DNA of 64,000 nt from Macrostomum hystrix. Taxonomy: Eukaryota > Animalia > Platyhelminthes. The translations under genes and the position numbers were made by a program. Numbering within the stretch: the stretch's first letter is position 1; every line of letters starts with the position of its first letter. The notes beneath the pieces are model-generated. The model saw only the letters and a program-made list of their open reading frames with translations. It was not told the origin of the DNA and ran no database searches. This document shows, in pieces, positions 3,308 to 35,907 of this stretch. The stretch lies in NCBI GenBank assembly GCA_950097015.1, contig CATNEN010000034.1, positions 4,526,001 through 4,590,000 of the forward strand, in the 5' to 3' direction.

Positions 3308-3316
3308 CGTGCTGGT
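3308..3316 (-). CDS. Lar: Candidate 9-nt microexon ACCAGCACG in the FN2-FN3 linker
   Basis: Context ttgcgtttattttttcctaaacccccattttatag|ACCAGCACG|gtaagc. In frame with no stop: LLG-N-Q-H-V-ASQP. Confidence 0.62.
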
Positions 3317-3807
3317 CTATAAAATGGGGGTTTAGGAAAAAATAAACGCAAATATAGCACACGGATTGAGACAGGTGGTACGCGAAGGAAAGGTTAACAT
3401 TGCGCTGCGGCTTCTGGGGTCATCATAAATAGTTTTTTTATTATCTGTTTAAGATGAGGAATTAAAAAATGGTCAATTGCGCAAGTCAGCAATAGGGGTT
3501 GGTTTGATAAAAGAGGGATTGATAAATACTTTCTTCAGTCGCGCAAATGAGAAGAAGTCTGTACGCTATTCTTCTCTTTGTATTTAAGGAAAAGGTGCTT
3601 CAGAAGGTAAAAAGATAAGCGCGGCGTATTTGCGAATGATGTTCGAGTAAAAACTTCCGGGTCTAGGATAAGAACAGGTAGGATATAAACAGGTATAAAA
3701 TATCTTTAAGGATTTTTTATCCTCCTCAAGCCTCTTCAGGTCTTAAGATGTTACTACGGGCCGATAACTGCATTTGGTTCCTCTTCCAAAACTAGTAAAA
3801 ATAGATT

Positions 3808-4985
3808 GAAGCGGGCACTTGTAGGTTGGAGTGGAACTCGTCCTTCGGAGGAAGAATTGGTTGGAGCGGGCACTTGTAGGTTGGAGTGGAACTCCTCCTT
3901 CAGAGGAAGAATTGGTTGGAGCGGGCACTTGTAGGTTGGAGTGGAACTCGTCCTTCGGAGGAAGAATTGGTTGGAGCGGGTACTCTGGGTTGGAGTGGAA
4001 CTCCTCCTTCAGAGGAAGAATTTGTTGGAGCGGGCACTCTGGGTTGGAGTGGAACTCGTCCTTCGGAGGAAGAATTGGTTGGAGCGGGCACTCTGGGTTG
4101 GAGTGGAACTCGTCCTTCGGAGAAAGAATTGGTTGGAGCGGGCACTCTGGGTTGGAGTGGAACTCGTCCTTCGGAGAAAGAATTGGTTGGAGCGGGCACT
4201 CTGGGTTGGAGTGGAACTCGTCCTTCGGAGGAAGAATTGGTTGGAGCGGGCACTCTGGGTTGGAGTGGAACTCGTCCTTCGGAGAAAGAATTGGTTGGAG
4301 CGGGCACTCTGGGTTGGAGTGGAACTCGTCCTTCGGAGGAAGAATTGGTTGGAGCGGGCACTCTGGGTTGGAGTGGAACTCGTCCTTCGGAGGAAGACTT
4401 GGTTGGAGCGGGCACTCTGGGTTGGAATGGAACTCGTCCTTCGGAGGAAGAATTGGTTGGAGCGGGCACTCTGGGTTGGAGTGGAACTCGTCCTTCGGAG
4501 AAAGAATTGGTTGGAGCGGGCACTCTGGGTTGGAGTGGAACTCGTCCTTCGGAGGAAGAATTGGTTGGAGCGGGCACTCTGGGTTGGAGTGGAACTCCAC
4601 CTTCAGAGGAAGAATTTGTTGGAGCGGGCACTCTGGGTTGGAATGGAACTCCTCCTTCGGAGGAAGAATTGGTTGGAGCGGGCACTCTGGGTTGGAGTAG
4701 AACTTCTCCTTCGGAGAAAGAATTGGTTGGAGCGGGCACTCTGGGTTGGAGTAGAACTTCTCCTTCGGAGAAAGAATTGGTTGGAGCGGGCACTCTGGGT
4801 TTGAGTGGAACTCGTCCTTCAGAGGAAGAATTGGTTGGAGCGGGCACTCTGGGTTGGAATGGAACTCCTCCTTCGGAGGAAGAATTGGTTGGAGCGGGTA
4901 CTCTGGGTTTGAGTGGAACTCGTCCTTCAGAGGAAGAATTGGTTGGAGCGGGCACTCTGGGTTGGAATGGAACTCCTCCTTCGAG
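3808..4985. repeat. Minisatellite, 54-bp unit, ~22 copies
   Basis: Unit gagcgggcactctgggttggagtggaactcgtccttcggaggaagaattggttg. It generates the 18-aa-periodic ORFs in several frames. Confidence 0.97.
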
Positions 4986-5989
4986 GGGACAATAAAATAG
5001 ATTATAACTCTTCCGACTAAAACAAATAAGACGCACCCCACATCGCTAAACTATAGTACGAGTATCATAAATCCGATAACATGAATCAGAAATCGCTTAA
5101 AGAATTATGTTTAGTTTTAGTTCCTTAATGCTTGAAAAGGGTGTTCAGAAATAAAAAGAGCGATTCGCGCAAATTTAAAATAAAATGAAATTTTGACACG
5201 ACGTTAAAACGTTTGTCATGGAGTTGATAATGTACGAAATAGGTTATGTCACTATATGAGTAAGGTGTGGCAGGCACAGGTAGGGTTCAATAAGTGATAC
5301 CAAATTGCGGTTTGAGTGGTATGATAGTATTAAGGTATGTATTAAATTAATTTAAAATTGGTCTGCTTATAAATCCTTACACCTAATACGTATTTCTCGT
5401 GTCAATGAAAAGTGCATCTTCAAAAACCATGAGTATCAGTTTGACAGTTCGACGAAAAAACCTGGTCGCGATGCATGCAAAACACGCAAAAATATGAAAA
5501 TATAAAGATAGATCGATAGTTGATAAAAAGAACCAGCCGTGAAAGGTAGTTTGGTACTCTTGGTAGTTTGGTCTCATGCAAATTACATTAAATTTGAATT
5601 TTTGAGCAAATATTTTTTGTGACGCGCAAAAATTGCGCTGAGAATGCACTCACTCACACACACAGCGCATGCTTGAGAAAACGCTTCAAGAACTTGAAAG
5701 CTTATAATTAACACGCAGTGATAGACGCACACTTAGAGAAAGAGAAAGTAACTTTAGGAATCTGGGGCTTGGCTTACTTAAAAGGAAAAACATTTATTTG
5801 GGTAAGAACACGGATAACACTTTGTCAACTGATAACGCTTGACTTGCGAACAAATTCAACGTAAAACTGAAATCAGTCTAACTTCTACTTTCCAATTATC
5901 ACTATCATCAAGACAGTTTGCCACACCTGCCACGTGATTAGAAATCCTAGCTGAGGGGGCAAACCATCTAGATTAAATCTTATGAATGA

Positions 5990-6815
5990 TTGAGCAACCT
6001 TCTAGATCATTGGCAAACCTTTCAGTTACTTGGACAACCTTCCAGTCCCTTAGGCAACCATATATTCATATTGACAACCTTCCTTTCACTTGGGCAACCT
6101 TCTATTCACTTCATCAAACTTCCAGTCACTTAGGCAACCTTCCTGTCACTAAGGCAACCTTCCAGTCACTAAGGCAACCTTCCTGTCGCTCATGCAACCT
6201 TCCAGTCACATAGGCAACCTTCCTGTCACATAGACAACCTTCCAGTCACTTAGGCAACTTTCTATTCATATAGACAACCTTCCAGTCACTTAGGCAACTT
6301 TCTATTCATATAGACAACCTTCCAGTCACTTAGGCAACTTTCTATTCATATAGACAACCTTCCAGTCACTTAGGCAACCTTCCAGTCACTAAGGCAACCT
6401 TCCAGTCACTAAGGCAACCTTCTAGTCACTTAGGCAAACTTCCTGTCACATAGACAACCTTCCAGTCACTTGGGCCTCTTTCCAGCCACTTAGGCAGCTT
6501 TCTAATCACATAGACAACCTTCCAGTCACTTAGGCAACTTTCTATTCACATAGACAACCTTCCAGCCACTTGGGCAACTTTCTAGTCACTCAGGCAACCT
6601 TCCAGCCACTTAGGCAACTTTCTAATCACATAGACAACCTTTCAGCCACTTAGGCAACCTTCCTGTCACTCAGGCAACCTTCCAGCCACTTAGGCAGCTT
6701 TCTAATCACATAGACAACCTTCCAGTCACTTAGGCAACTTTCTATTCATATAGACAACCTTCCAGCCACTTAGGCAACTTTCTAATCACATAGACAACCT
6801 TCCAGTCACTCAGGC
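5990..6815. repeat. Minisatellite, 20-bp unit (with 40-bp dimers)
   Basis: Unit ggcaaccttccagtcactta and variant agacaacc/ggcaactttctattcata. Confidence 0.95.
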
Positions 6816-6891
6816 GATCACTCTCTAAACTGGTTGAATTAAGCAACTGTTTTTATGTGCGGAAGTGGTTAAAAAAACGGTGGTCAAGTCT

Positions 6892-7172
6892 TTATAAACA
6901 GATTTCATGCAAGATAGGTAGATAAGGAAGAATCGGTAAGTCTCTCTTTAAGGTGGTGAGGGATTCGGTTAAAAGTTGTTGGGCAATAGATAGAATTATC
7001 AAAATACAGGCCAGCAGTCGGCTTGACTCAAGATATAAAAAGGTAAATAATTGGCAACTTTTCCGGCTGTCTTCGGCTCCATGTTGAAAAGCACAATGGG
7101 ACCGTAGAGTAACATGAGATTCGGATAAAAGAACTGACTCTAAGCACGACTCATTGTGACAGCCAGTGACTG
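6892..7172 (-). CDS. Candidate alternative terminal exon (TVTGCHNESC...SRLLACILIILSIAQQLL...HEICL*)
   Basis: A long pyrimidine tract and a tandem TAG/CAG acceptor at 7170-7174 lie 111 nt downstream of the 48-nt exon donor. The phase-1 frame is open to TAA at 6892-6894 and contains a hydrophobic segment. Confidence 0.38.
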
Positions 7173-7283
7173 CTAGGTGGTGGTAGTAGTAGAAGAAGAA
7201 GGAGAAGAAGAAGATAAAGAGGCCATTGAAGCAGACAACGCGCTTGCTGAGGCGCCAATTGAGAAAACGGCTCATCAACTTAC

Positions 7284-7331
7284 TGTGTGCGGCGGCAGCG
7301 TAGAGGGCATTTTCATGAATTTGCCCTGAAT
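7284..7331 (-). CDS. Lar: Candidate 48-nt cassette exon (NSGQIHENALYAAAAH) in the FN2-FN3 linker
   Basis: Context ctattctctttttacag|AT TCA GGG ... GCA CAC A|gtaagt. Phase 1-1, open frame, GC-richer than its flanks. Confidence 0.68.
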
Positions 7332-7681
7332 CTGTAAAAAGAGAATAGAAATAGCATCGGCGTGCCACAAGGATGAGGATGGTTTAGACTTTCATTTTGC
7401 CCGAACGAATTGCTGCAGACCATGCTGTCTGTTATTTTCGCTGTCCGAATCGCGTCGCACATTTGCGGTGCGAGAAAAGAGTAGCTAGTTTATAAGACAA
7501 CTTAATTTTCTTTAACAGAAAAAATCTATAGGCAAAATCATCTCAAAGGGCTCAGCCCAATATAAGACGATTGTAAAAAACTCACAATGTGGGTAGCTAA
7601 AGTTTCTCCAGGATTTCAAAATAATGAAAATTTGTTTTCATAAATAAAATAAGAAAAAACTAGGGCTAGGAATTTTATTGT

Positions 7682-7945
7682 AACTATAATAATTGCAGGG
7701 GGCATCATTTGGTGACACTAGACCTGCAGGCCAGCGAGAAGGCTAATTACTGCCCAATTCGTTGACTCCTGAGCACACGCGCACACGGATACGAGTACTG
7801 TACGCAGGCATGCACACGCTCACACAGTTGTGTACATCTGCCCTGACTTTCTCATCGTCAGGCTGTGAACAATTTCACTGTGTCCTAAATAAATGTGGCC
7901 TCGACTCGGAATCGAACTGGCGAGAGAGGCAAACGCGTTAACGGA
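7682..7945 (-). mobile_element. tRNA-derived SINE family A, internally deleted copy
   Basis: Shares gactcctgagcacac...ctcacacag..gtgtacatctgccctgactttctcatcgtcagg and aatgtggcctcg with the reverse complement of 40387-40747. The tail taataattgcagg is at the left end. Confidence 0.8.
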
Positions 7946-8951
7946 TCTGCAATTGATTCCTTCTACAAGTGATTAATGTTAAGCCGTTGTGGGTGAAGGG
8001 TTAACATTAATCACGTTAATCCTAAACTGTGCTCCCTCCCAAGTCCCTCCTACCTGATGGATTCTAGATGGTGATTTTTGCTGCGGCCTTTTAAATCTCA
8101 GGAGAAGGACAAATGAAGGTCAACTTTAAATTTCCTGGCGATTGCGTTTTCAGTCGAATATTTTAAAATCGCGCGCAATTTTTTGAGTTGCAACAAGCGG
8201 GGTGATAATTAACCTGTTATCTACACAATAAAGTTTATATATTTAGCTGCATAAAATAAGCAGTTTTGTTTTAACCGATCACGATGAGCGATCGTGAGGA
8301 TCGAATCTGATTCGCGCGGCAGTCCAGCAAGTAATATAATAGTAAGCATAGCTAATTAGTAGTAATGCGAATTATATAATTAAATAATCATTTACTCGCT
8401 GTGTTGACGTTCGCGCGCGGTAAACATTTTTTATGACTTTCTTTTATTATAAAAGTAAGAAATGATAAAAAAAATAATGAATAACTTTAATAAAAATATA
8501 AATATATGTAAATACAATGGGTACAAACGGGTATGACCCAAAACGGACAAAAGGCTACAGCTTGGTTGCATATGTCATTAAAGTCTTACCTGTTCAAATA
8601 ATCTGGCACGCTCTTTAAATTATGGTTTCTATTTTCTATCAAGACTACTGTGAGTAGAAAATCTAGGTGCAAAAGGACCTCATTTGATTTTAAAGTGATA
8701 GTTTAAATATAGAATAAAATTACTTAACTAAAATTTCACGCACCCATCGATGCAAACATAAAACCCTCCACCCACAGCTACAATAAAGGCGAGCAGTCGG
8801 ATGCAATGGTGGATATTCAATTTAGCAAAACACACCTTTGGTTAAAAAGGCATGCCAATTTAATGCAGGGGATTTATCCCATCAGGGTATTAGAGTGTCA
8901 TCTACGTGAGTAGGCTGGAATCAAGAACACGCAAATATCTCAGCAACTCAC

Positions 8952-9150
8952 TGCCTAGGAGCGTCACGAACGGAAAGACATCGCTGACGGGACCTTCTCC
9001 CGCTTCGTTGAATGCGCTCATGCGAATGTAGTAGGTGACATTAAAGTCCAAGTTGCTGATGGTGTGCTGACGAACTTCTGGCTTCAGGGTGACTTTGGTG
9101 TACGTGCTGATCTCCGCCGAACCGAATGTCGTGTAGTAGATGTAGAAGCC
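8952..9150 (-). CDS. Lar: Exon, second half of FN3 repeat 2 (GFYIYYTT...LDFNVTYYIRMSAFNEAGEGPVSDVFPFVTLLG)
   Basis: Acceptor acacag at 9151-9152 (phase 0) and donor GTGAGT at 8951 (phase 1). It is 199 nt and carries the FN3 motif AFNxAGEGPxS. It is missed by the ORF track because it has no start codon. Confidence 0.93.
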
Positions 9151-9259
9151 CTGTGTGTGTTTAACGAAATATATTAAAATGTCTTCCAGTGTAATCTGCT
9201 ATCGAATGCTGATTACCTGTCTTCAAGTGTAATCCGCTATCGAAAGAGAAAAAACTCAC

Positions 9260-9360
9260 CTGAATAACCCCGTAGACGTCAAGCGGCTCGTCCCAGCTGA
9301 TGACAACGGATGCCCTGGATGTCATGGTCACTTTGATATTCTGCGGCGGCGAACCCGGGG
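9260..9360 (-). CDS. Lar: Exon, first half of FN3 repeat 2 (APGSPPQNIKVTMTSRASVVISWDEPLDVYGVIQ)
   Basis: Acceptor ctctctgcag at 9361-9362 (phase 1) and donor GTGAGT at 9259 (phase 0). It joins the next exon across a 109-nt intron. Confidence 0.93.
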
Positions 9361-9803
9361 CTGCAGAGAGCAACAATTTTTTTGACGAGTAAATTTAAAA
9401 TAGAGGAAAGCTTAGAAGACTACTACTCGTAGTAAGTAGGCTCCATATACGGAGATATTCTTGCTAGATATGCTCGTAATATCGAAAAAAAATACTATGA
9501 TGGAGCAAATACTTCGGGGGAAAGATCTTGTGAGATGATTTTCTGAGCGGAAATGACTAGAATTAATATTAACAAACAAAATTTTTATGCGTATTTTTTA
9601 TGTAATCGACATGCAAGATCTATGGACATAGTTATGGCATTGTTAACACTTTGTGTAATAAAAAATAACCTAAAGACTGTAAATACGACTGTGAACAGCA
9701 AATATTGTATTAAGTCTATTTGTACTCGTACAAATAAGTTACAATATATGCTGGCGTTAGCCGAGAGAAATGTAAACATAGAATTTTTTCAAGAATTTCA
9801 GGA

Positions 9804-10351
9804 CTTGAAAATTTTTATTGGCTAGATAAGGTTTAATCCAACTATACTAAATCTCTAAAGTCTGTCTGTCTGTTTTTTATTGGCTAGATAAGGTTTAATA
9901 TGTTGCTATTTTTAGAACATGATTGGGAGCCCCCCGTTTAACCACACCCTCGCTCTGTTCAAGCTATACTTAACATCTAGCAAGGACTTAAAAGTTTGAT
10001 TAGCCAATGAGAGTTAAGGTGCTGCTATTTTTAGAACATGCTTGGGAGCCCCCAGTTTAACACCACACTCGCTCTGTTCAAGCTATTCTGAACATCTAGC
10101 AAGGACTTAAAAGTTTGATTAGCCAATGAGAGTTAAGGTGTTGCTATTTTTACAACATGCTTAGGAGCCCCCAGTTTAACCACACCCTCGCTCTGTTCAA
10201 GCTATTCTTAACATCTAGCAAGGACTTAAAAATTTGATTAGCCAATGAGAGTTAAGGTGTTGCTATTTTTAGAACAACTTATAGGGACTCCCTTAGTTGA
10301 ACTATCCTCAGTCTAAGCACGTGACTACTCCTAGCCAATCAAATTTTCAAG
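9804..10351. mobile_element. MITE/foldback-like element: ~21-bp terminal inverted repeats enclosing three-plus ~119-bp tandem units
   Basis: Left end cttgaaaatttttattggctag (9804-9825) is nearly the reverse complement of right end ctagccaatcaaattttcaag (10331-10351). The internal unit is gctatttttagaacatg...gattagccaatgagagttaaggt. No TSD was found. Confidence 0.55.
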
Positions 10352-11985
10352 ATTATTAAAAGCAAACACTGAACACTAAAATCTGAATCCTTGGAGACAA
10401 GCTTGCAGGCATGCGATCTAAACGAACAATTACTTATTTAAATTTGAACTAAAAACTACAAATCTATACTAAGAATGTACTAAAAGCTCATTAGAAAATA
10501 TATTCTTAAAATGAAAAAAGCACATAGATTCTCCTAGGTACGTTCAATTTCCAAATAAGTACTAGTTTAAATTTTTCAGCATAAATTAATATGATGCTTC
10601 TACAATCTAAAGTATGAGTGTAATGCTATAATATAATTTACTATAGTTTACTAGTGTCATTAAATCGATAAACATTGCTGCGATTCCCTCACGTTCCATG
10701 GCGGTGATCAGTGACAACCGACCACTCCAGACCGATGCTTGTGTAAAACAAAATTTCGTAACGATTTTTTGCAAACAAACTTAGAAATCTAAGTTCTTTC
10801 TGCATTTTAAATTAGCTTATTTGTTTAAGATTTCGTATAGAAAAAATATGCTATCTAATCTGTGACTTGGTTAGTAGAAAATTATTTCATCGAAAAGGAA
10901 ATATTCGAGGGAAATCAATGTGAGATTGTGACGAATTGAAATTGGTTGTCTAAAAAAGTGTTTAACAGAGTTGCACGTAGTTTCTAGCTAATTTCACTGG
11001 ATTTTTTATTTTAGATTATCTGTAAGAGTTTAGGAGAAAACTAATGGGTCAGTATTTTTGGGATTTCGGATTTTTGGAAATTTCGGAATGGTAAAATAAA
11101 GAAAAAAATCGGGACTCGATCTTAAAGATTTTTAAGGGAGTTTTTTTCTCGAAAAACTAGTTGCCTAAGCCTTTGCTTTGTGAGGAGAAATGCTGTATTA
11201 AAAACGAGCTATTCTGTTGTATAATCCTACAGAAGTAGTAATTTTCCTAATCTAAATCCGAGGAACAGCATCTTACGAAGTGGCAGCGCATGCGGCAACG
11301 AATTAGTGTCGCCCTGCAGCGGCAGTGACTGCCCATAGACAGTCGCTGTGTTGGCGCAGCGGCGGAAAAACAAAATGAAATAATTAGTAATTCACTCACA
11401 CTTTTTTATCTGGCAATAAACTGACCAATCTACTCACACTTTGGTTAGTAGTGTGTTAGTAGTAATAAACGCAAATTAAATTAAAGTAAGGAGAAAATAG
11501 CGGCATCGTGAGTAGAAATGCGAATATTGCGCAGCGCCAGTCAAATGATGGCAGATACATGATTTGGTAGCCGGAAGTTATGATGAAGCATTCGATTATC
11601 GTTTTGTGACCCGGTCGCATATGCATATATATGTATGTACATAATTAGCAATACCTTCACCTATTTCGGTTTGATCAAATTGCTAATCGTGCCTATATGA
11701 GTTTTTCTATTCCAGCTGTATTAGTTAAATCAAGCCGCTATACAAACAGTCACTTACTGGGTCAGTACCCGTGCCGCTAATGCAGGCGCACACACTTCAG
11801 ATATAGCCAACGTGAGCACACTTAAAATATCTGTTTGTCTCGGATAAATATTGGACAATATCTGGATGCTTGAAAGAAGAAACCTAGCTCAATTCGCTAT
11901 CTATTTTTTGTCTAAAATGCATACATTTTTTTCCTTACAATAGCGGTCCGATCGATTTAAATGTCGCGGTCAAGATCACACTCAC

Positions 11986-12591
11986 CCAGCTCCTTGGTAG
12001 TGAACTCAATGATGCTGTTATTCTTGGCATTCACCGAGCTGGCATTGGTGGTGACAGAGTTCACCTTCAGCTGGTACTTGGTGAACGGCTTCAGACCACG
12101 GATGGTGGCCCTGATGAGTCTGTCGCCAGCCCTGGGGTCGGGCCGGTTCGGCACTCCCTCCATCTGGATCCAGTTGTGACTGGCGCCAACGCTGATGGCC
12201 GCCTCCTCCCGATAGCTGATGGTGTAGGAGCGCACATCCGGGGTGACCGACTGGCGAAACTCGAGCACTGCCGAGCGCGGCTCCAGTTGAACAACGCGAA
12301 GGTCAGTCGGTGGCTCCGGCATCTTCAGCACGCGAACCAGCACCATCCACTGGATGCGGCCCAAGCTGTTCTCAGCGACGCAGGTGTAGTTCTCATCGGC
12401 TTGAATGTCCGTGAGGCGGAGCACGTTCTTGCCTACAACCGACCTCTCGTCGAGATCCACTCCGTGAGAATCGAACCAGCGGACTACGGGCATCGGGGAG
12501 CCGACGGCGATGCACGTGATGTTGGCGCTGCTGCCGGGAGTGACCTCCACGTTGGACGGGCGCACAGAGAAGTGCGGACTGATTGTGCGAA
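11986..12591 (-). CDS. Lar: Exon, Ig3 plus FN3 repeat 1 (VRTISPHFSVRPSNVEV...NYTCVAENSLG...MPEPPTDLRV...GLKPFTKYQLKV...TTKEL)
   Basis: Acceptor ccccgcag at 12592-12593 and donor GTGAGT at 11985. It is 606 nt, phase 1-1. I-set C-W-C and FN3 GLKPFTKY motifs are present, and it is GC-rich. Confidence 0.96.
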
Positions 12592-12744
12592 CTGCGGGGC
12601 GTGTGTGAAATCAGGTAGCGGAATGAGAACTGTGCTCACCTGGCGTTAGGTACAGTTCTATTGCCCGGCTGTTGAAAGAGCGCCAGCTATTGACCATGGC
12701 AGGGGCCGGCAAACTTATGCGCCTCGGGCTAAAGAGAGTCCAAG

Positions 12745-15950: not shown

Positions 15951-16128
15951 CTGTAACAGACCAATAGAAGCGATTTTGTTAAAGGACCAAGTGGAATAGA
16001 GGGAGGGAGGCAGAGAGAGATGAAGATAAGGTGCGGGATACGGATGACAGGTTTGTTACGTCTTGAATGAAAGTTATTTATGTATTTTATTTCCACGAGC
16101 ATTATTACGGGCTGTTGAACTGACTTAC

Positions 16129-16134
16129 ATTTGG
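16129..16134 (-). CDS. Lar: Candidate 6-nt microexon CCAAAT at the Ig2-Ig3 junction (meB position)
   Basis: Context catttttgcccttcactctctctctcctcgtttcag|CCAAAT|gtaagt. In frame: FVR-A-K-F-RTISP instead of FVR-V-RTISP. Confidence 0.7.
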
Positions 16135-19100
16135 CTGAAACGAGGAGAGAGAGAGTGAAGGGCAAAAATGAACAAACTTTGAACCTTGAGTTCTGTTCTT
16201 CATAACAGAGAACATTGTATAGAGTAAATATCATGATTTAAAGTGCATTCTCGCAGCGCAACAGACACTTTGTACTCGTATTAGACTAATATCAACAGGA
16301 AACTCTTGAAATATTCACAAATCCGATGCAGCCAAATGGCAAGTTTTGGCACAAATAATTAAAAAATATAATTATAACATTGACAAAATCGAAGCGGTAC
16401 TCACTTTTGAAGCCAAGTGAAAAAAAACGTTGAAAAAAACAAAGAGTCTTGTGAAATAAATAAAGTCTGTGCCATACAAAGTTATGCATTAATAGTTTCT
16501 TGTCAACCGACGTGTTCTATTTTTAGACGGGGTAATCCACCAGAAAATATGTACAATAGAAGGGGTAAGAGTTTGGCCGCGCGGGATTGGTGCACATAAG
16601 GCGAGAGATGTACATAAGGGGACAGGAATGTAGTCAAGAGAGTGTGTGGATGGGTGCTGATTGGTTCTGGTTTACTCGCGAGTCAAGTGTACTTCAAGCT
16701 TCTGTTCTCAAAGGATATTTGCTCAACCGTAAATGAGCAATGAATGATGGATTCATCCAGCAGATATCGTAGTGATTGTTGTATGTATTTATATCAAATC
16801 TGTCTATAGACCACATTTTTAGGAGAAAACACTCGGCCAAATCACAGCGCAGCCAATACTCGTATGATATTTAATATTGAATCCGACTTTCTGTTTAAGA
16901 CAAACAATGTGTGGAATAGTACTATGCTATGGCAGTGTGTAAATTTCTTGTGACATTCCAGCACTCCAGCAGCAGCTCAGTTGACAATATAGAAAAAATA
17001 TTAGCTCGTAAACTAATTCAATTTAAAATAACAAATAAAAAGAAATGCAGCATGCTTTTCATAGACAGGCCTGCATTTAGGTATGGGTTTCTGGCTTTCG
17101 TACTTGGACCTTGAGGACTCCAACTCGTGGCGACTGAAAGTTCGGTTGTTGTCCATTATTTAACTGAGTAAGCAGATGGTCTTGTTAAATTAAACATTCT
17201 ATTGGAATACTTGGCTGGTAGGTTTCATTGATCCTTTGTGTACTTCAGTGACTAGAGTTGGTGAGTAAGAAGCAAAAATAAAAAATTATGGAACATGTAT
17301 TCTTGGTATCTGACTTAATGAAATCTACCTTAGCTAGCCAATAGTATAGGATATTTCCAATTTTGCCATCAGCCTACGCAGCACCATTGTCCTGTGATTA
17401 TCATTCAGTCCGCATAGCGAAAAAAAGTAGGATACAAATGTAACGAAAACAAAGTTATTTATTTTGAGCATAATTCCAACTGACGACACACTATGAGTTA
17501 AGATACATATGGGCCTTTTTCATGCCTTCATATTTACTCGTGCTATGAATCGCTTTACACTATCCTAGCCTGCCTCCCGAAGGAGAACAGAGAAGAGGGT
17601 TGAGTAGGGTTGAGTAAGGCAGCAGACAGAAGGAGTGGCTCTTCTGCATAGAACTGTAAATGTAGGAGAATGGACTCAAGCGAGCCAACGCCCTCTTCAG
17701 TGCGTGAAGCGGTTCTGCAAGAGTCAGAAATTGAGCGAGAGGCAGGGGCGAAAAGCCCTGGAAGAGAAATGCGTGTGCGCGCGTGTGAAGGAACTGCTGA
17801 CACTGAGACCCTTCTCGACATTGAGAAGCTATGACGCAATCAGCAGCCAGCTAATCAGGCCCCAAGCCTGAAAATTCGTTGCTTCAAGAATTATTTTCCC
17901 TCCCCACTTTGGTCTGGAAATATTCGAATGAATCTCCAAAGAGTTCCTAGTTTAAACGGTGGGAAATCTACAGCATAAATTTGCTGGGCCATTTCACCAT
18001 AGCTTATTTTTGCTCTATATGGCAGGTAAAAAAACAAACAAGACCAACTGGAGTAGGTACCGTGCTTGCGTGACTGGCATAGGCTCGAGGACCTCGCCAT
18101 AGTCTCTCCTGTCACTCTTCCCCAACTCTCTTCAAACCCAATGAGACATGAATATCGAAAATTGAGACACTGTTCTATAATAGAAAAGCCATTGATTCTT
18201 TTCTTTTATGTATTTTCTCAGATTGGAATCTGCCAGTGTGTTCTGTAATCCCACATATTTTTCGCTTAAAAAAACTACAGAAGGTACGTGGCCTATAGTC
18301 TTGGTTGCACCAGGGGGAGCTTGTGGCCCCAAGAGGATCAGTGGCAGATCGGCACTATTGTCTCTGAGACTAGATTTATAGTCTCTTCTATAAATTCTAT
18401 TGAGAATATATTTTTATTTTATCTATTTAGTTATTATTTCGGTGGTAAAGAGGGTTTTTAGGTAGCAGACCGGAGAATTGAGGTTAGAGACTAGGTCGAA
18501 AGAGCATAACCAAGCTGAATGCTTAGCAGTTGACAAATTTTTCGGGTCCACATCCGGAGACGAGAGGAGAAGCTGCGGGCAATCGGAAGTGATTGCGTAA
18601 GAGTATTAGCCAAGCCCGAGCCAATGTCTCTCCGTGCCCAGGACAACTAATTCACTTTGTAGCGCAGACTAATAACAAAGGCAGAAAAATGGTGAGTTTA
18701 ACACGACCGTGAATCGCAGTTCCTGTCCCAGCCTTGTCAGTCTGACTATTGCCTGTCAGCAGAAATCAGTTCCGTGTTTCTGATGCAATACTGCGTAAGA
18801 AAAGTTTTAGTCGAGGCAGCACTTAAGTTTTGTTAACCAGATTACAATTTCTGTGCTGCCCTTACAATCTTATCCCAAATCAGTGGGCTGCAATTCATTT
18901 GTAAACTGTTCAGCTCACAACAAACAATTCATAGCGTCATCGCACAATGCCGCTTCCTGAAGATGCACCGCTTCTAAAATACCTTTGACTAGCTATATGC
19001 AGAAGTGAGTTCCAGGTGCCGGGCATGTTATGAAGAAAAAATGTGGCTGCTCTGCTCAAAAAAGACATCCTATGCTCTGACGGCCTAATTAGTGTTAGCT

Positions 19101-21781: not shown

Positions 21782-21892
21782 CTCTAACAAACAGGTGCGC
21801 GTCCGTGGACTCGGCCGAGCCGAATTCGTTCCTTGCTATGCAGGCGTATTTGCCCTCGTCCTGAGTTTGAGCCTGAGCAATCTCCAGGTCCC
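21782..21892 (-). CDS. Lar: Exon, C-terminal half of Ig2 (GDLEIAQAQTQDEGKYACIARNEFGSAESTDAHLFVR)
   Basis: Acceptor cacaacag at 21893-21894 and donor GTGAGG at 21781. It is 111 nt, phase 1-1, and contains the DxGxYxC motif. Confidence 0.95.
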
Positions 21893-21954
21893 CTGTTGTG
21901 AGGATACAGGTGCCAATGTTGCAGAAGCAATTAATAGCCGACTGTACTGGGTGG

Positions 21955-25323: not shown

Positions 25324-25329
25324 AGAATC
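25324..25329 (-). CDS. Lar: Candidate 6-nt microexon GATTCT within Ig2 (meA position)
   Basis: Context ctgatatttctgcttgcatcctatttttag|GATTCT|gtgagg, with two TGC motifs just upstream. In frame: SPT-G-F-W-DLEI. Confidence 0.58.
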
Positions 25330-27524: not shown

Positions 27525-27960
27525 GGTATTAGAAGTAGGCATTAAGGTAGGGATTGAAGTAGGGATTGAGGTAGGGATTGAGGTAGGGATTGAGGTAGGT
27601 ATTGAGGTAGGGATTGAGGTAGGGATTAAGGTAGGTATTGAGGTAGGTATTAAGGTACGGATTGAGGTAGGGATTAAGGTAGGTATTGAGGTAGGTATTG
27701 AGGTAGGGATTGAGGTAGGGATTAAGGTAGGTATTGAGGTAGGGATTGAGATAGGGATTGAGGTTGGGATTGAAGTAGGGATTAGGGTAGGGATTGAAGT
27801 AGGGATTGAGGTAGGTATTGAGGTAGGTATTGAGGTAGGAATTAAGGTACGGATTGAGGTAGGGATTGAGGTGGGATTAGGGTAGGGATTGAAGTAGGGA
27901 TTGAGGTAGAGATTGAGGTAGGCATTGAGGTAGGGATTGAGGTAGGGATTGAGGTAGGGA
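27525..27960. repeat. Minisatellite, 12-bp unit gggattgaggta
   Basis: Direct inspection; gives the GIEV-periodic ORF. Confidence 0.95.
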
Positions 27961-29820: not shown

Positions 29821-30399
29821 GGGATACCAAAGACTGGAATCAGACAGGAAAAGGCAAAGATAGACAAAAACTCATCTCCAAGCAGTCTTATATGCTAAGC
29901 TACAAGGCAGACAGCTGTAACTGGAGAAACAAATAATTATCCATCAGTCACGTCCGAAAGTCGCGCAGTTGAGTTCTAATGTAACGGAGCACATATCCCA
30001 GGCCAGTCAGCAGCGCGAGTATCAGGGTAGGCTTATAGGGGGCCCAGCATACAGCAGGATTAATTGTTGACTTATCTACCATCGCAGGGGAGGAAGCATG
30101 CTGCTCAATCATTGTCAAATTATTCCAACCAAGCAAAGGCAAAGAGTCCTGACAGCTGACACAAGAGTGACACATAATTCACAGACATTCAGGTAAGTTA
30201 GGTAGTCTGATTAAAGCTAAGAGGAAAGGTGAATAATGCTCTTTACTATTTTTCTTCAGCTAGAAGAGATTGAGTGTTCATGGTTCATCAAAGCTTGACG
30301 CCGGAAGACCCAATGCAGGCTGAAGAAAGTACATTGAAAAGGCTTGGAAATGTCCAGAGACTTAAGCAGATGCGACAGCAGTCATAGACCAAGTCTAAG

Positions 30400-30632
30400 G
30401 ATCTGTGACTTCAAAATGTGAGGATCTGTGACTTCTAAATCTGAGGATCTGTCACTTCTAAATATGAGGATCTGTGAATTCTAAATATGAGGATCTGTCA
30501 CTTCTAAATGTGAGGATCTGTGACTTCTAAATATGAGGATCTGTCACTTCTAAATCTGAGGATCTGTGACTTCTAAATATGAGGATCTGTGACTTCTAAA
30601 TCTGAGGATCTGTGACTTCTAAATTTGAGGAT
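30400..30632. repeat. Minisatellite, 23-bp unit gaggatctgtgacttctaaatat
   Basis: Direct inspection, ~10 copies. Confidence 0.93.
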
Positions 30633-31714
30633 TTGTGAGCATGAGTTTCGTCTCTGAGTCTAAAGCCATACACGCAGGCCATAGACCACAAAGAGTAAAT
30701 GCTGATGCATTTGCTGGGATGCACAATCAGGCGGGACACACAGGGGAACTGAGGAAGCGGGCGGTCAAAGAGTGAACAAATGCCGCTCATCATATGAAAG
30801 GGTCGGGGCCGGGGCAGATTAAAACTAACCCGACTGTATCCAAGGCGCAGACAAAGGCGGCCCAAATGAGGGAGGCCGCGCTGCTAATGTGGAATTATTC
30901 AGATTAATTAAGTCGGCACAAAGTGAAGTCTAAAAGGTTCTGCTTCCTCAGCCGTCTTGTCAGGTTGCTGGCGGCGAGGCGAGTTCCAAACGGGGGTAGG
31001 GCTGGATGACAAATCCACATCAGATCCACATAGAGAGATGAGGCAGTGGGAGACTGATGCTTTTGGGTAAGTAAATTGAGCAGACGATTTTTTTGAGGAA
31101 ATCAGATTCACTGAGGCCATCGAGTTCAGATGGATAATCTTTTCTATATGGCCTGTGCAACACCACCAGCCAAGGAATAAGCCCATTTTGACTCCATTTG
31201 ACTAGTCTAGCGAAATCTGAAAAAAATAATGTAGAAAAAGCTTTCACTGATTTTCGGTAGAGCGGACAGAAGCAGGGGGGGAGCTGCCTCATCAGTGAAG
31301 GCGCGGATGAGGGACGCACAGACAGACACTGAGCACGCTTGAACTGCTGCTACACGCAAAGGCCAAGCCAAGCGGCTACTGAGGATGTAAGGGATAAATA
31401 AAAAAAGAGACACAAGAAGATAAAGCAGAAACGCCAACGGCGGTGGGGAATTTTAGCGCCGTTGGGAAATTCAATTTGCAACTAGCCCGGGCTGAGATAG
31501 AGGAACAGAACTTATGAAGACACACAATTCTTTTAAGGATAACAAAAAGCACAAAATTTTTTTCGCTAACAGATAACCTAGCGGAGAATGGGAGCTGTTG
31601 GATTGCAGATGGACTCGGTAGTTTTAACAGGAAGTTGGAACCATGAATTGATAAAAAAGAAGATGGACTAAGAATGTAAGGACAATGAGGCTGGTGTGAT
31701 ATAGTGAGAAAATG

Positions 31715-32942
31715 TATGGCAGAGAGACAGTGGGGGAGAGACAGTGGGGCAGAGACAGTGGGGGAGAGACAGTGGGGGAGAGACAGTGGGGCAGAGACAG
31801 TGGGGCAGAGACAGTGGGGGAGAGACAGTGGGGGAGGGACAGTGGGGCAGAGACAGTGGGGGAGAGACAGTGGGGGAGAGACAGTGGGGCAGAGACAGTG
31901 GGGGAGAGACAGTGGGGCAGAGACAGTGGGGCAGAGACAGTGGGGGAGAGACAGTGGGGCAGAGACAGTGGGGGAGAGACAGTGGGGGAGAGACAGTGGG
32001 GGAGAGACAGTGGGGGAGAGACAGTGGGGGAGAGACAGTGGGGGAGAGACAGTGGGGCAGAGATAGTGGGGGAGAGACAGTGGGGGAGAGACAGTGGGGC
32101 AGAGACAGTGGGGGAGAGACAGTGGGGCAGAGATAGTGGGGGAGAGACAGTGGGGGAGAGAAAGTGGGGGAGAGACAGTGGGGGAGAGAAAGTGGGGGAG
32201 AGATAGTGGGGGAGAGACAGTGGAAGACAGTGGAGCCGAGACAATGGGGGAGAGACAGTGGGGGAGAGACAGTGGGGCAGAGATAGTGGGGGAGAGACAG
32301 TGGGGGAGAGAAAGTAGGGGAGAGACAGTGGGGGAGAGAAAGTGGGGGAGAGACAGTGGGGGAGAGAAAGTGGGGGAGAGACAGTGGGGGAGAGAAAGTG
32401 GGGGAGAGACAGTGGGAGACAGTGGAGCCGAGACAATGGGGGAGAGACAGTGGGGGAGAGACAGTGGGGGAGAGACAGTGGGGGAGAGACAGTGGGGGAG
32501 AGAAAGTGGGGGAGAGACAGTGGGGGAGAGAAAGTGGGGGAGAGACAGTGGGGGAGAGAAAGTGGGGGAGAGACAGTGGGGGAGAGAAAGTGGGGGAGAG
32601 ACATTGGGAGACAGTGGAGCCGAGACAATGGGGGAGAGACAGTGGGGGAGAGACAGTGGGGGAGAGAAAGTGGGGGAGAGACAGTGGGAGACAGTGGAGC
32701 CGAGACAATGGGGGAGAGACAGTGGGGGAGAGACAGTGGGGCAGAGATAGTGGGGGAGAGACATTGGGAGACAGTGGAGCCGAGACAATGGGGGAGAGAC
32801 AGTGGGGGAGAGACAGTGGGGCAGAGATAGTGGGGGAGAGACAGTGGGAGACAGTGGAGCCGAGACAATGGGGGAGAGACAGTGGGGGAGAGACAGCGGG
32901 GGAGAGACAGTGGGGAGAGACAGCGGGGGAGAGACAGTGGGG
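31715..32942. repeat. G-rich minisatellite, 15-bp unit agagacagtggggg(g/c)
   Basis: Direct inspection. It is the source of the 597/441/435-aa SPTVS-type ORFs. Confidence 0.97.
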
Positions 32943-32991
32943 GATACAAGCAGGAATCTTAATATTATAGGCCAAATATCAGACCACTCAC

Positions 32992-33168
32992 CAGTGGGGC
33001 TCATTGACAGTCGCGGTAGGCTGATGTCCAGTGGTATGTAGTCCTTGGTCCATGTGATTCTGGGCCGAGGCTCGCCAGCTACCTGACAGGTCAGCTTCAC
33101 ACGCTCGTCCTTTTCAACCACCTGCATGCCTGGTGCCTTTACAATGCGCGGAAACCCGAGCGGAATCA
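32992..33168 (-). CDS. Lar: Exon, N-terminal half of Ig2 (VIPLGFPRIVKAPGMQVVEKDERVKLTCQVAGEPRPRITWTKDYIPLDISLPRLSMSPT)
   Basis: Acceptor tcccacag at 33169-33170 and donor GTGAGT at 32991. It is 177 nt, phase 1-1, and resembles LAR Ig2 (GFPxI..P..KVVEK....C...G.P.P.I.W.KD..P.D). Confidence 0.95.
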
Positions 33169-33195
33169 CTGTGGGATAGTTGAAATTTTACTTTC

Positions 33196-33915
33196 AGAGC
33201 ACTGATGGATCTGGAGGGTATATTGGCATCAGAGCTGATGGATCTGGAGGGTATATTGGCATCAGAGCTGATGGATCTGGAGGGTATATTGGCATCAGAG
33301 CTGATGGATCTGGAGGGTATATTGGCATCAGAGCACTGATGGATCTGGAGGGTATATTGGCATCAGAGCACTGATGGATCTGGAGGGTATATTGGCATCA
33401 GAGCACTGATGGATCTGGAGGGTATATTGGCATCAGAGCACTGATGGATCTGGAGGGTATATTGGCATCAGAGCACTGATGGATCTGGAGGGTATATTGG
33501 CATCAGAGCTGATGGATCTGGAGGGTATATTGGCATCAGAGCTGATGGATCTGGAGGGTATATTGGCATCAGAGCTGATGGATCTGGAGGGTATATTGGC
33601 ATCAGAGCTGATGGATCTGGAGGGTATATTGGCATCAGAGCTGATGGATCTGGAGGGTATATTGGCATCAGAGCACTGATGGATCTGGAGGGTATATTGG
33701 CATCAGAGCACTGATGGATCTGGAGGGTATATTGGCATCAGAGCTGATGGATCTAGACGGTATATTGGCATCAGAGCTGATGGATCTGGAGGGTATATTG
33801 GCATCAGAGCTGATGGATCTGGAGGGTATATTGGCATCAGAGCTGATGGATCTGGAGGGTATATTGGCATCAGAGCACTGATGGATCTGGAGGGCACATT
33901 GGCACCAGAGCACTG
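33196..33915. repeat. Minisatellite, 33/35-bp unit ctgatggatctggagggtatattggcatcagag(ca)
   Basis: Direct inspection. Confidence 0.97.
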
Positions 33916-34289
33916 ATGGCTTAATCAGATGTTTTCACGGCTTCACAAATTGCACTAAATCGTTAAAAAAGTGAAGCTGGAGGATAATTTTCTATATATA
34001 AAAAAAATTAAAGGTGAAAATCGATATAATGACAGAAACAATTTTCCAGTCTGCATTAGAGCAAGCACTTTAGCAGCTAACATCTGTGAAAAAAAACTTT
34101 GCACTTAGCTTATTGCCTGTTGCTTTCTGTATGAATATTAAATTACAAATAATGCACTCAGCAACCTACAGGTGGGCTACTAAAGTTCTTCACGCTACGG
34201 CGCGGCTAAGAGCTACCTAGAAACTCTAGTATTGCCTCTGATTTTACAATAGCCACAGGTGGGATCAAAGAGCATGCAGTTAACTGACT

Positions 34290-34702
34290 GAAATACTGTG
34301 TCAGTTTACTGACTGTCAGGCTGTCAGTTAGATGACTGTGAGACTGTGTCAGTTTACTGACTGTCAGACTGTCAGTTTACTGACTGTCAGACTGTGTCAG
34401 TTTACTTAATGTCAGACTGTGTCAGTTAGCTGACTGTGAGACTGTGTCAGTTTACTGACTGTCTGACTGTGTCAGTTTACTGACTGTCTGACTGTGTCAG
34501 TTTACTGACTGTCTGACTGTGTCAGTTTACTGACTGTCAGACTGTGTCAGTTAGCTGACTGTGAGACTGTGTCAGTTTACTGACTGTCTGACTGTGTCAG
34601 TTTACTGACTGACAGACTGTGTCAGTTTACTGACAGTCACACTGTGTCAGTTTACTGACTGTCAGACTGTGTCAGTTTACTGACTGTCACACTGTGTCAG
34701 TT
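34290..34702. repeat. Minisatellite, 25-bp unit actgtgtcagtttactgactgtc(a/t)g
   Basis: Direct inspection. Confidence 0.94.
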
Positions 34703-34722
34703 AAGTTATGCAGTTTACTCAC

Positions 34723-35028
34723 CGGAAGTCCTTGAATAGACGTACAGTCTGGCAGTCTGGGTGACTGAAACAGACGTGACGGCATTCTTGGCCACGCAGG
34801 CAATCAGGGTGTTGTTGTCCTCGCTGGCTCGAGCGGGGTCGATGCGAAGCACTTTGCCGAACGAGATGGCGAAAGAGAAGAATCGCGTCAGGGCCTGCGT
34901 CGGACGCTGGTCGTTCACCAGCCATTCAATCTCGGGAGCGGGACTGCCCTCAGCACGACAGATGAACAGGGCTGCGGTGTTGTCAAGGACGCTGATGGTT
35001 TCTGGGCCTTGCGTGATGCGGGCTTCCT
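34723..35028 (-). CDS. Lar: Exon, Ig1 (EARITQGPETISVLDNTAALFICRAEGSPAPEIEW...VLRIDPARASED...CVAKN...TARLYVYSRTS)
   Basis: Acceptor catcaacag at 35029-35030 and donor GTGAGT at 34722. It is 306 nt, phase 1-1, with Ig C-W-C and the LAR-like A.F.C.A.G.P.P.I.W and VLRI.P motifs. Confidence 0.95.
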
Positions 35029-35066
35029 CTGTTGATGACGGGTGGTTTGGTTGAGGCTTAATTATA

Positions 35067-35680
35067 CTAGTCTGTCCTGAGGATTCCACTAGTCTGTCCT
35101 GAGGATTCTACTAGTCTGTCCTGAGGATTCTACTAGTCTGCACTGAGGATTCTACTAGTCTGTCCTGAGGATTCTACTAGTCTGTCCTGAGGATTCTACT
35201 AGTCTGTCCTGAGGAATCTACTTGTCTGTCCTGAGGATTCTACTAGTCTGTCCTGAGGATTCTACTAGTCTGTCCTGAGGAATCTACTTGTCTGTCCTGA
35301 GGATTCTACTAGTCTGTCCTGAGGATTCTACTAGTCTGTCCTGAGGAATCTACTTGTCTGTCCTGAGGATTCTACTAGTCTGTCCTGAGGATTCTACTAG
35401 TCTGTCCTGAGGATTCTACTAGTCTGTCCTGAGGATTCTACTAGTCTGTCCTGAGGATTCTACTAGACTGTCCTGAGGAATCTACTAGTCTGTCCTGAGG
35501 ATTCTACTAGTCTGTCCTGAAGAATCTACTAGTCTGTCCTGAGGATTCTAGTAGTCTGTACTGAGGATTCTACTAGTCTGTCCTGAGGATTCTACTTGTC
35601 TGTCCTGAGGATTTTACTAGTCTGTCCTGAGGATTCTACTAGTCTGATTTGAGGATTCTACTAGTCTGTCCTGAGGATTC
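35067..35680. repeat. Minisatellite, 22-bp unit ctagtctgtcctgaggattcta
   Basis: Direct inspection. Confidence 0.96.
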
Positions 35681-35897
35681 TCTACAAAATCTCTACAAAA
35701 GTGGCCCAGACTGCCGTGAGCAGTGATCACAAGGCGAGGCCATAAAAGTACGCCAGCAGATGGTCTCCGGACTGTCCAGGGAACGGCAGACAATAAAGAG
35801 AGTGACAGGCGGTTCGTGGGACGTTGGGAGGGCTGGACCACATTAATTCGATGCCTAGCCACAGTCTCCAGGCAGGGCTTTATTTTGTTCAACTTAC

Positions 35898-35907
35898 TGC
35901 CCGCAAT
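35898..35907 (-). other. Candidate 10-nt microexon ATTGCGGGCA between the signal-peptide exon and Ig1 (not frame-preserving alone)
   Basis: Context catgcgaaagtttgctttcttttag|ATTGCGGGCA|gtaagt: TGC plus pyrimidine tract plus a perfect donor. Confidence 0.5.

What the first reader, a model, noticed from the sequence alone, without database searches (positions are those of the whole stretch)
3308..35907. A hidden microexon splice code in an invertebrate LAR-type receptor phosphatase, including the two sites used by vertebrate meA and meB
Seen in the sequence: five tiny segments in the 7-11 kb introns are each bracketed by a pyrimidine tract plus AG and a consensus GTRAG donor. They are 10 nt (35898), 6 nt (25324), 6 nt (16129), 48 nt (7284) and 9 nt (3308). 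Four are frame-preserving and stop-free in the gene's phase 1, and most have TGC upstream of the AG. Established knowledge: vertebrate PTPRD/S/F carry mini-exon meA inside Ig2 and meB between Ig2 and Ig3. These control binding to IL1RAPL1, Slitrks, TrkC and SALMs, and UGC near the 3' splice site marks SRRM4/eMIC-regulated neural microexons. Inference: the 25324 and 16129 candidates sit in exactly the meA and meB introns but encode unrelated residues. This would be either a deeply conserved position with turned-over sequence or a convergent code, plus new insertion sites in the FN2-FN3 linker. Four independent in-frame cassettes alone would give 16 ectodomain isoforms.
Basis: partly seen in the sequence, partly recalled or inferred. 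Interest (0 to 1): 0.85.

Follow-up and report, generated by a model that had tools for sequence, protein, structure and literature searches.

The report
Conserved mini-exons in flatworm LAR phosphatase
A flatworm gene for a LAR-type nerve-cell receptor hides several tiny optional exons in its long introns, one of them at the same spot where vertebrates use a mini-exon to tune synapse partner choice; three of the five proposed ones are conserved in a sister species and one is seen in RNA.

Summary
The window carries, on the minus strand, the Ig1-Ig3/FN1-FN3 part of a LAR-type receptor tyrosine phosphatase of a Macrostomum-like flatworm. The closest relative is M. lignano (88% protein identity).

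All five segments exist as described. Their number is not above background: the same rule gives 11 hits on each strand.

Comparison with the orthologous M. lignano locus separates real from chance.
- **48 nt (7284-7331):** 86% identical, with only synonymous changes plus one whole-codon indel. It is annotated in M. lignano protein A0A1I8J799, and spliced to the FN2 exon in RNA contigs of 2 of 4 runs.
- **6 nt (16129-16134, meB position):** conserved with its splice sites, and the one change is synonymous.
- **9 nt (3308-3316):** conserved 9/9 with its splice sites.
- **New 45-nt exon (10693-10737, FN1-FN2 linker):**

The dominant transcripts skip all four, so they are optional cassettes.

The meA-position 6-mer (25324) and the out-of-frame 10-mer (35898) could not be tested. 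I found no support for UGC/eMIC control. The intron positions and phase do match vertebrate meA and meB.

Verdict: partly supported, a new member of a known kind.

The parts
34723..35028 (-). Ig1 exon (306 nt, phase 1 to 1)
   Evidence: Pfam I-set hit, E 3.5e-09. Splice sites CAACAG| and |GTGAGT.
35898..35907 (-). 10-nt candidate in the intron before Ig1 (intron 38780-35029); out of frame; unverified, probably a chance pseudo-exon
   Evidence: The signals are present. The length is not a multiple of 3. No orthologous sequence or reads were available. The two other out-of-frame hits (12640, 2707) are not conserved.
32992..33168 (-). Ig2 first-half exon, ending ..SPT + G (phase 1): the meA-equivalent boundary
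   Evidence: tblastn to vertebrate P0120 residues 171-219.
25324..25329 (-). 6-nt candidate GATTCT in the meA-position intron (G to GFW); untested
   Evidence: Good signals, 12 of 15 pyrimidines, TAG, GTGAGG. It is the only hit in this 11-kb intron. There is no M. lignano sequence for this intron.
21782..21892 (-). Ig2 second-half exon, ending ..HLFVR + G (phase 1): the meB-equivalent boundary
16129..16134 (-). 6-nt microexon CCAAAT in the Ig2-Ig3 linker intron (V to AKF)
   Evidence: The M. lignano orthologue TTTTCAG|CAAAAT|GTAAGTCA lies at L001 3335-3340, 29 of 35 identical and collinear. It is the only AG-N6-GTRAG in that intron, p = 0.0046. The one exon change is synonymous (GCC to GCA). 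It is not in the dominant RNA contigs.
11986..12591 (-). Ig3 + FN1 exon (606 nt)
   Evidence: RNA contigs of 4 runs. Pfam Ig_3 and fn3 hits. 82% nucleotide and 88% amino-acid identity to M. lignano.
10693..10737 (-).
   Evidence: AG and GTGAG flank it in both species. Twelve codons are identical in protein, with six synonymous differences. It is skipped in all four RNA runs.
9260..9360 (-). FN2 exon a
   Evidence: RNA joints 9360>11986 and 9149>9259 in 4 runs.
8952..9150 (-). FN2 exon b, ending ..TLLG + A (phase 1)
   Evidence: RNA contigs. The main contigs of X3 and X5 end exactly at 8952.
7284..7331 (-). 48-nt cassette exon in the FN2-FN3 linker (NSGQIHENALYAAAAH)
   Evidence: Conserved from TTTTTACAG to GTAAGTTG. 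M. lignano has 51 nt, with 4 of 4 substitutions synonymous and one added codon. RNA joint 8952>7331 in X3 and X5. The peptide is present in M. lignano A0A1I8J799 and absent from PAA53983.1.
3308..3316 (-). 9-nt microexon ACCAGCACG in the FN2-FN3 linker (M to NQHV)
   Evidence: Exact orthologue TAG|ACCAGCACG|GTGAG at L001 13869-13877. It is the only AG-N9-GTRAG in that intron, p = 3.8e-6. No RNA evidence was obtained.
1650..1962 (-). FN3 exon (313 nt; one base longer than in M. lignano)
   Evidence: Pfam fn3 hit. Alignment to L001.

Best explanation
The window holds the ectodomain half of a LAR-type (type IIa) receptor tyrosine phosphatase gene of a Macrostomum-like flatworm. Its long phase-1 introns carry at least four short, frame-preserving cassette exons kept by selection. 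These are a 6-nt microexon in the Ig2-Ig3 linker (the vertebrate meB position), a 45-nt exon in the FN1-FN2 linker, and a 48-nt exon followed by a 9-nt microexon in the FN2-FN3 linker. Each is recognised by its own strong 3' and 5' splice sites. Each inserts 2-16 residues at a domain boundary without changing the frame, so combinations give ectodomain variants with different linker length and surface. The bulk transcript of the whole animal skips all of them. Inclusion is therefore optional and presumably limited to some cells or stages. Shown: conservation of the four exons with their splice sites, coding-type substitution patterns, RNA use of the 48-nt exon, and skipping in the major isoform. 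Inferred: inclusion of the 6-, 9- and 45-nt exons in mRNA, cell-type specificity, and an effect on ligand binding. The meA-position 6-mer (25324) remains an open candidate at about 0.4. The 10-mer (35898) is probably chance.
For: Introns are otherwise unalignable between the window and M. lignano, and third codon positions of the Ig3-FN1 exon are only 59.9% identical. Even so, the YAG+exon+GTRAG cores of 16129, 7284 and 3308 reach 0.73-0.88 of the maximum alignment score in the orthologous intron. All 20 other sense or antisense AG..GTRAG hits reach 0.16-0.48. The matches are collinear. M. lignano has exactly one AG-N6-GTRAG in the partial Ig2-Ig3 intron and one AG-N9-GTRAG in the FN2-FN3 intron, and they match 5/6 and 9/9. 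In the 48-nt exon, 4 of 4 substitutions are synonymous and there is one codon indel. The 45-nt exon has 6 synonymous changes across 12 conserved codons. In the 6-nt exon the single change is synonymous. RNA contigs join 8952 to 7331 with GT..AG ends in 2 of 4 runs, and the main contigs of those two runs stop at 8952, as expected at an assembly branch. M. lignano A0A1I8J799 reads ..TLLG-NSGQIAHENALYAAAAH-MASQ.., while PAA53983.1 reads ..TLLGMASQ...
Against: No read or contig showing the 6-, 9- or 45-nt exon in mRNA was obtained. All four main contigs join FN1 directly to FN2a. They also extend 2 nt (AG) past the Ig3 acceptor, which fits a direct Ig2b-Ig3 junction. Both M. lignano protein models lack insertions at the meA, meB and FN1-FN2 sites. 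By signal counting alone the set is not enriched over the antisense strand. Only one other species was available, so conservation rests on a single pairwise comparison.
Confidence: 0.72

Rival explanations
1. The tiny conserved islands (6 nt and 9 nt) are not coding cassettes. They are intronic processing elements: paired 3'/5' splice sites used as stepping stones or decoys to remove 7-9 kb introns in pieces, and they are themselves spliced out of the final mRNA.
For: They lie in the longest introns. Conservation is centred on the splice signals. The dominant transcripts do not contain them.
Against: Recursive sites need AG directly followed by GT. Here 6 or 9 frame-preserving, stop-free bases lie between them and are themselves conserved (5/6 with a synonymous change, and 9/9). 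The neighbouring 48-nt exon of the same type is demonstrably included in RNA and in a protein model.
Confidence: 0.13
2. All the segments other than the 48-nt exon are chance AG...GT pairs, and their matches in M. lignano are coincidence.
For: Equal numbers of hits occur on the sense and antisense strands. There is no RNA evidence for them.
Against: The probability of the observed matches at the only comparable sites in the orthologous introns is 0.0046 and 3.8e-6. The matches are collinear with other islands. The control hits show no such conservation.
Confidence: 0.05
3. For the two untested segments only: 25324 (GATTCT) and 35898 (10 nt) are chance pseudo-exons, and the meA-position intron has no microexon.
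For: Non-conserved sense-strand hits occur at about 0.13-0.3 per kb, so 0.4-1 frame-preserving chance hit is expected in an 11-kb intron. The 10-mer breaks the frame, like the non-conserved 19- and 29-nt hits. M. lignano A0A1I8J799 has no insertion at ..SPNG|DLII...
Against: All three frame-preserving hits that could be tested turned out to be conserved. 25324 has a strong tract (12 of 15 pyrimidines) and a consensus donor.
Confidence: 0.6

Closest known systems
Vertebrate LAR-RPTP mini-exon meB (PTPRD/PTPRS ELRE, PTPRF DQRE)
   Same: It sits in the same place: between ..YVR and VRR.. at the Ig2-Ig3 boundary, in a phase-1 intron. Compare Solea PTPRS ..NLYVR-ELRE-VRRVPP.. with P0120 ..NLYVRVRRVAP.., and the window's ..HLFVR|V|RTISPHF. 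It is an optional, frame-preserving microexon that lengthens the linker.
   Different: It is 6 nt rather than 12 nt, and encodes AK(F) rather than ELRE or DQRE, with no sequence similarity. Inclusion in RNA, neuronal regulation and a ligand effect are not shown here. The vertebrate ligands named in the literature (IL1RAPL1, Slitrks; PMC8711739) were not looked for in flatworms.
Vertebrate mini-exon meA (meA3 ESI, meA6 GGTPIR) inside Ig2
   Same: The window has a phase-1 intron splitting Ig2 at the homologous point..SPT|G|DLEIAQ.. against vertebrate ..LRS G ALQIE... I recalled the exact vertebrate insertion point from memory. PMC8711739 only says that meA is inserted in Ig2.
   Different: Only an unverified 6-nt candidate (GATTCT, giving G-F-W) lies there, with no conservation or RNA evidence.
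Macrostomum lignano A0A1I8J799 / PAA53983.1 (orthologous gene models)
   Same: A0A1I8J799 already contains the 17-residue orthologue of the 48-nt exon, and PAA53983.1 skips it. The gene structure and phases are the same.
   Different: Neither model contains the 6-, 9- or 45-nt exons. The window comes from another species, with 88% protein identity in Ig3-FN1.
Flatworm and bilaterian microexon programmes (planarian vast-tools survey, PMC4978528; eMIC/Srrm234 programme, PMC8797185)
   Same: These are short (3-27 nt), frame-preserving cassette exons with strong own splice sites and conserved flanks, in a synaptic adhesion gene. In planarians, 262 microexons are documented.
   Different: The regulator is unknown. 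UGC near the 3' splice site is not conserved between the two Macrostomum species. The mouse and fly eMIC programmes share only four exons, and Lar is not one of them (PMC8797185).

Membership tests
[quoted passage not shown] | Three N-terminal Ig domains followed by fibronectin type III repeats | tested here: met
   Pfam I-set, Ig_3 and fn3 hits on exon translations. The spliced translation aligns to LAR proteins of fish, fly and horseshoe crab.
[quoted passage not shown] | Transmembrane segment and two tandem cytoplasmic PTP domains | tested here: inconclusive
   This part of the gene lies beyond base 1 of the window. In the orthologous M. lignano locus, L001 37925-41183 encodes D1 and D2 at 73-79% identity to a vertebrate LAR-family protein.
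meB-type mini-exon of LAR-RPTPs | Microexon in the phase-1 intron between Ig2 (..YVR) and Ig3 (VRR..) | tested here: met
   Position and phase are identical. The segment is conserved with its splice sites in M. lignano.
meB-type mini-exon of LAR-RPTPs | 12 nt encoding ELRE or DQRE (sequence homology) | tested here: not met
   The segment is 6 nt, CCAAAT or CAAAAT, giving V to AKF.
meB-type mini-exon of LAR-RPTPs | Alternative inclusion in (neuronal) mRNA | tested here: inconclusive
   The major contigs of four whole-animal RNA runs fit the skipped form. Minor forms could not be inspected.
meB-type mini-exon of LAR-RPTPs | Inclusion switches binding of postsynaptic ligands | not testable with these tools
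   This needs binding assays.
meA-type mini-exon of LAR-RPTPs | Microexon(s) used inside Ig2 | tested here: inconclusive
   The intron is at the right place. The candidate 25324 has signals only. No orthologous intron or reads were available.
eMIC/SRRM-dependent neural microexons | Length 3-27 nt, frame-preserving | tested here: met
   The 6- and 9-nt exons meet this. The 45- and 48-nt exons are longer.
eMIC/SRRM-dependent neural microexons | UGC motif close upstream of the 3' splice site | tested here: not met
   It is present in the window. It is absent within 30 nt upstream in M. lignano for the 6-nt and 51-nt exons, and present only for the 9-nt exon.
eMIC/SRRM-dependent neural microexons | Neural-specific inclusion that depends on the eMIC domain protein | not testable with these tools
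   No tissue-resolved RNA or knock-down data were available.

The most novel reading that the evidence does not exclude
An alternatively spliced microexon at the Ig2-Ig3 linker of LAR-type phosphatases dates back to the bilaterian ancestor, with the site and phase kept and the sequence turned over. Alternatively, it has arisen independently at the same linker in flatworms and vertebrates. Either way, that linker would be a recurrent evolutionary handle for tuning trans-synaptic recognition, with further flatworm-specific handles in the FN1-FN2 and FN2-FN3 linkers.
Probability: 0.2. Interest if true: 0.8.

Novelty: new member of a known kind. Interest (0 to 1): 0.6.

Why it matters
LAR-family mini-exons are among the best understood cases in vertebrates of a few residues deciding synaptic partner choice. 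Microexon programmes are reported to have been almost wholly rewired between phyla: mouse and fly share four exons, none in Lar (PMC8797185). A conserved flatworm microexon at exactly the meB position, plus three further linker cassettes, gives a concrete and testable case for separating deep ancestry from convergence. It would also provide a tractable invertebrate system, since M. lignano is transgenic-capable (PMC5173321), for asking what linker insertions do to LAR function. The analysis further shows that signal-based prediction of 6-9 nt exons can be checked by one well-chosen sister genome.

Tried and rejected
- **Counting signal-defined pseudo-exons.** Sense and antisense gave no excess (11 against 11), so this test cannot decide.
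- **The search for homologous proteins, 217-aa Ig3-FN1 exon as query.** No hits.
- **The search for homologous proteins, P0005 and P0152 residues 1-240 as queries.** They returned only the two M. lignano models and distant Ig proteins. There were no transcript-derived fragments of the window's species and no M. lignano protein covering Ig1-Ig2 with a contig on record.
- **The look-up of encoding contigs for P0152 and P0151.** Not on record. The M. lignano introns before Ig1 and inside Ig2 could therefore not be fetched.
- **Read laying.** The single call went on 7150-12740. The loose-end letters at the Ig3 acceptor were not among the rows shown, so the meB junction could be read only indirectly, from the 2-nt overhang.
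- **Other conserved islands in the Ig2-Ig3 intron (18578-18622, 17787-17802, 17046-17057).** I examined them as possible exons and rejected them. They lack an AG/GT pair in one or both species.
- **The 19-nt hit at 2707-2725.** Rejected, because M. lignano has no donor there.
- **The listing of cluster members on fly, snail and horseshoe-crab LAR proteins.** No isoform sets came back to test for meB-site insertions in other phyla.
- **The high-depth spot at 7700-8000.** Rfam and tRNA scans found nothing.


Full report
**What is in the window**

Translating the minus strand gives a series of phase-1 exons:
- Ig1: 35028-34723
- Ig2 first half: 33168-32992
- Ig2 second half: 21892-21782
- Ig3 + FN1: 12591-11986
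- FN2 in two exons: 9360-9260 and 9150-8952
- FN3: 1962-1650

Pfam confirms I-set/Ig_3 and fn3 domains.

An exhaustive profile search with the Ig3-FN1 exon found two kinds of hit. One was Macrostomum lignano proteins. The other was LAR proteins of fly, horseshoe crab and fish among the non-giant Ig proteins.

The orthologous M. lignano genomic locus was fetched as L001 (NIVC01002990.1:1-41382). It continues downstream into two PTP domains that are 73-79% identical to a vertebrate LAR-family protein. So this is a LAR-type receptor phosphatase of a Macrostomum-like flatworm. In Ig3-FN1 the window is 88% identical in protein and 82% in DNA to M. lignano. Third codon positions are only 59.9% identical, which points to a different species at substantial neutral distance.

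**Checking the observation**

All five segments lie on the minus strand with the described signals. The Ig2a|Ig2b intron interrupts ..SPT|G|DLEIAQ... The Ig2b|Ig3 intron interrupts ..HLFVR|V|RTISPHF.., both in phase 1.

A fish PTPRS isoform reads ..NLYVR-ELRE-VRRVPP.., where another vertebrate protein reads ..NLYVRVRRVAP... The second intron is therefore exactly the meB site. The first corresponds to the meA site inside Ig2. PMC8711739 gives the general location; the exact residue is from my own knowledge.

Counting gives no support. The same signal rule finds 11 hits on the gene strand and 11 on the antisense strand.

**Conservation**

blastn of the window against L001 aligns the exons and only three intronic islands.

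Identity starts at TTTTTACAG and ends at GTAAGTTG. M. lignano has 51 nt. All four substitutions are synonymous in phase 1, and the length difference is one whole codon: NSGQIHENALYAAAAH against NSGQIAHENALYAAAAH.

It has AG and GTGAG on both sides in both species. It encodes ..WSGRLSLITAME identically despite six synonymous differences.

*The 6-nt and 9-nt candidates.* Local alignment of the small candidates against the orthologous introns found TTTTCAG|CAAAAT|GTAAGTCA for the 6-mer at 16129. This match is 29 of 35 identical, and the exon change GCC to GCA is synonymous. It found TAG|ACCAGCACG|GTGAG for the 9-mer at 3308. Both matches are collinear with the other shared words.

*Control.* The cores of these three candidates reach 0.73-0.88 of the maximum score. 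All 20 other sense or antisense AG..GTRAG hits in the comparable introns reach 0.16-0.48.

*Uniqueness.* M. lignano has exactly one AG-N6-GTRAG in the available part of the Ig2-Ig3 intron, and it matches 5/6 (p = 0.0046). It has exactly one AG-N9-GTRAG in the FN2-FN3 intron, and it matches 9/9 (p = 3.8e-6).

**RNA and protein evidence**

Four runs of one study hold the Ig3-FN1 exon completely. Their contigs are spliced, with joints 9149>9259 and 9360>11986 and GT..AG ends in all four. They are therefore RNA.

Two runs (X3, X5) contain a joint from the FN2b donor (8952) to the acceptor of the 48-nt exon (7331). In exactly those two runs the main contig stops at 8952, as expected at an assembly branch. 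In X2 and X4 the main contigs pass 8952 without touching 7284-7331.

The 45-nt exon is skipped in all four runs.

The main contigs extend two letters (AG) past the true Ig3 acceptor. This fits the end of Ig2b (..TTAGAG) and not ..CCAAAT. I therefore infer that the major isoform also skips the 6-nt exon. Minor forms could not be inspected.

In M. lignano, A0A1I8J799 contains ..TLLG-NSGQIAHENALYAAAAH-MASQ.. and PAA53983.1 does not. That is independent evidence that the exon is optional there. Neither model has insertions at the meA, meB or FN1-FN2 sites.

**What could not be tested**

The M. lignano contig begins inside the Ig2-Ig3 intron. No other M. lignano record could be reached. Neither 25324 (meA position) nor 35898 therefore has any comparative or RNA evidence.

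| Segment | In its favour | Against it | My estimate that it is real |
|---|---|---|---|
| 25324 (6 nt) | All three testable frame-preserving hits proved conserved | About 0.4-1 frame-preserving chance hit is expected in an 11-kb intron | about 0.4 |
| 35898 (10 nt) | Signals present | Breaks the frame; resembles the two non-conserved out-of-frame hits (12640, 2707) | about 0.15 |

**Mechanism**

Shown:
- There are four short exons with their own strong splice sites.
- They lie in phase-1 introns at domain boundaries.
- They are under purifying selection in the coding frame.
- One is used in RNA.
- All are absent from the major isoform.

Inferred:
- They are cassette exons included in a subset of cells.
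- They insert AK(F) in the Ig2-Ig3 linker, 15 residues between FN1 and FN2, and 16 and/or 3 residues between FN2 and FN3. This would change linker length and surface.

The proposed UGC/eMIC control is not supported. TGC upstream of the AG is present in the window. In M. lignano it is missing within 30 nt for the 6-nt and 51-nt exons.

A conserved GCATG lies about 0.9-1.2 kb upstream of the 6-nt exon. This is only a hint of Rbfox-type control.

**Comparison and novelty**

LAR mini-exons meA-meD are well described in vertebrates (PMC8711739, PMC10883964). Microexons as a class are documented in planarians (PMC4978528). The mouse and fly eMIC programmes share only four exons, none in Lar (PMC8797185).

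I found no description of a microexon at the meB position in an invertebrate LAR in the papers I searched. That search was limited.

The 48/51-nt exon is already in a public M. lignano model. The 6-, 9- and 45-nt exons appear in neither of the two M. lignano models I could retrieve.

I file this as a new member of a known kind. It has the same site and logic as meB but no sequence homology, so ancestry and convergence both remain open.

Noticed in passing
window 1650-1962 (around 1683-1688), minus strand: The FN3 exon is 313 nt, one base longer than its M. lignano orthologue. Read in the gene's frame it hits TGA at 1684-1682, and after a +1 shift it continues ETVVCRTMEF up to the donor at 1649. 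This is either an assembly indel or a real frameshift allele.
   Followed up: partly
window 18578-18622, 17787-17802 and 17046-17057, minus strand: Three further collinear conserved islands lie in the Ig2-Ig3 intron, and none is an exon. The first is AATACTSTTACGCAATCACTTCCGATTGCC. The third contains GCATG, an Rbfox-type motif, about 0.9 kb upstream of the 6-nt exon. They may be splicing control elements.
   Followed up: partly
window 38284-38891, minus strand: The exon before Ig1 ends ..FIDYDK+A|GTGAGT at 38781, matching M. lignano ..YYFIDYDKKEARITQ... It is followed by eight more 60-bp tandem copies of the exon end plus its donor site.
   Followed up: partly
window 7700-8000 (core 7808-7881): An interspersed repeat has copies at 40399-40711, 39726-39796 and 49220-49409. 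In the RNA runs its summed contig depth is in the thousands, from many 90-95% identical contigs. There was no Rfam or tRNA match.
   Followed up: partly
window 21893-21946, minus strand: The reading frame stays open for 18 codons upstream of the Ig2b acceptor, behind a second CCCACCCAG acceptor-like site. An alternative 3' splice site there would insert VQSAINCFCNIGTCILTT at the meA position. There is no evidence that it is used.
   Followed up: no
window 12285, runs X2 and X5: A contig of lower depth follows the FN1 exon down to 12285 and then continues with unrelated sequence. It may come from a paralogue or be a chimeric contig.
   Followed up: no
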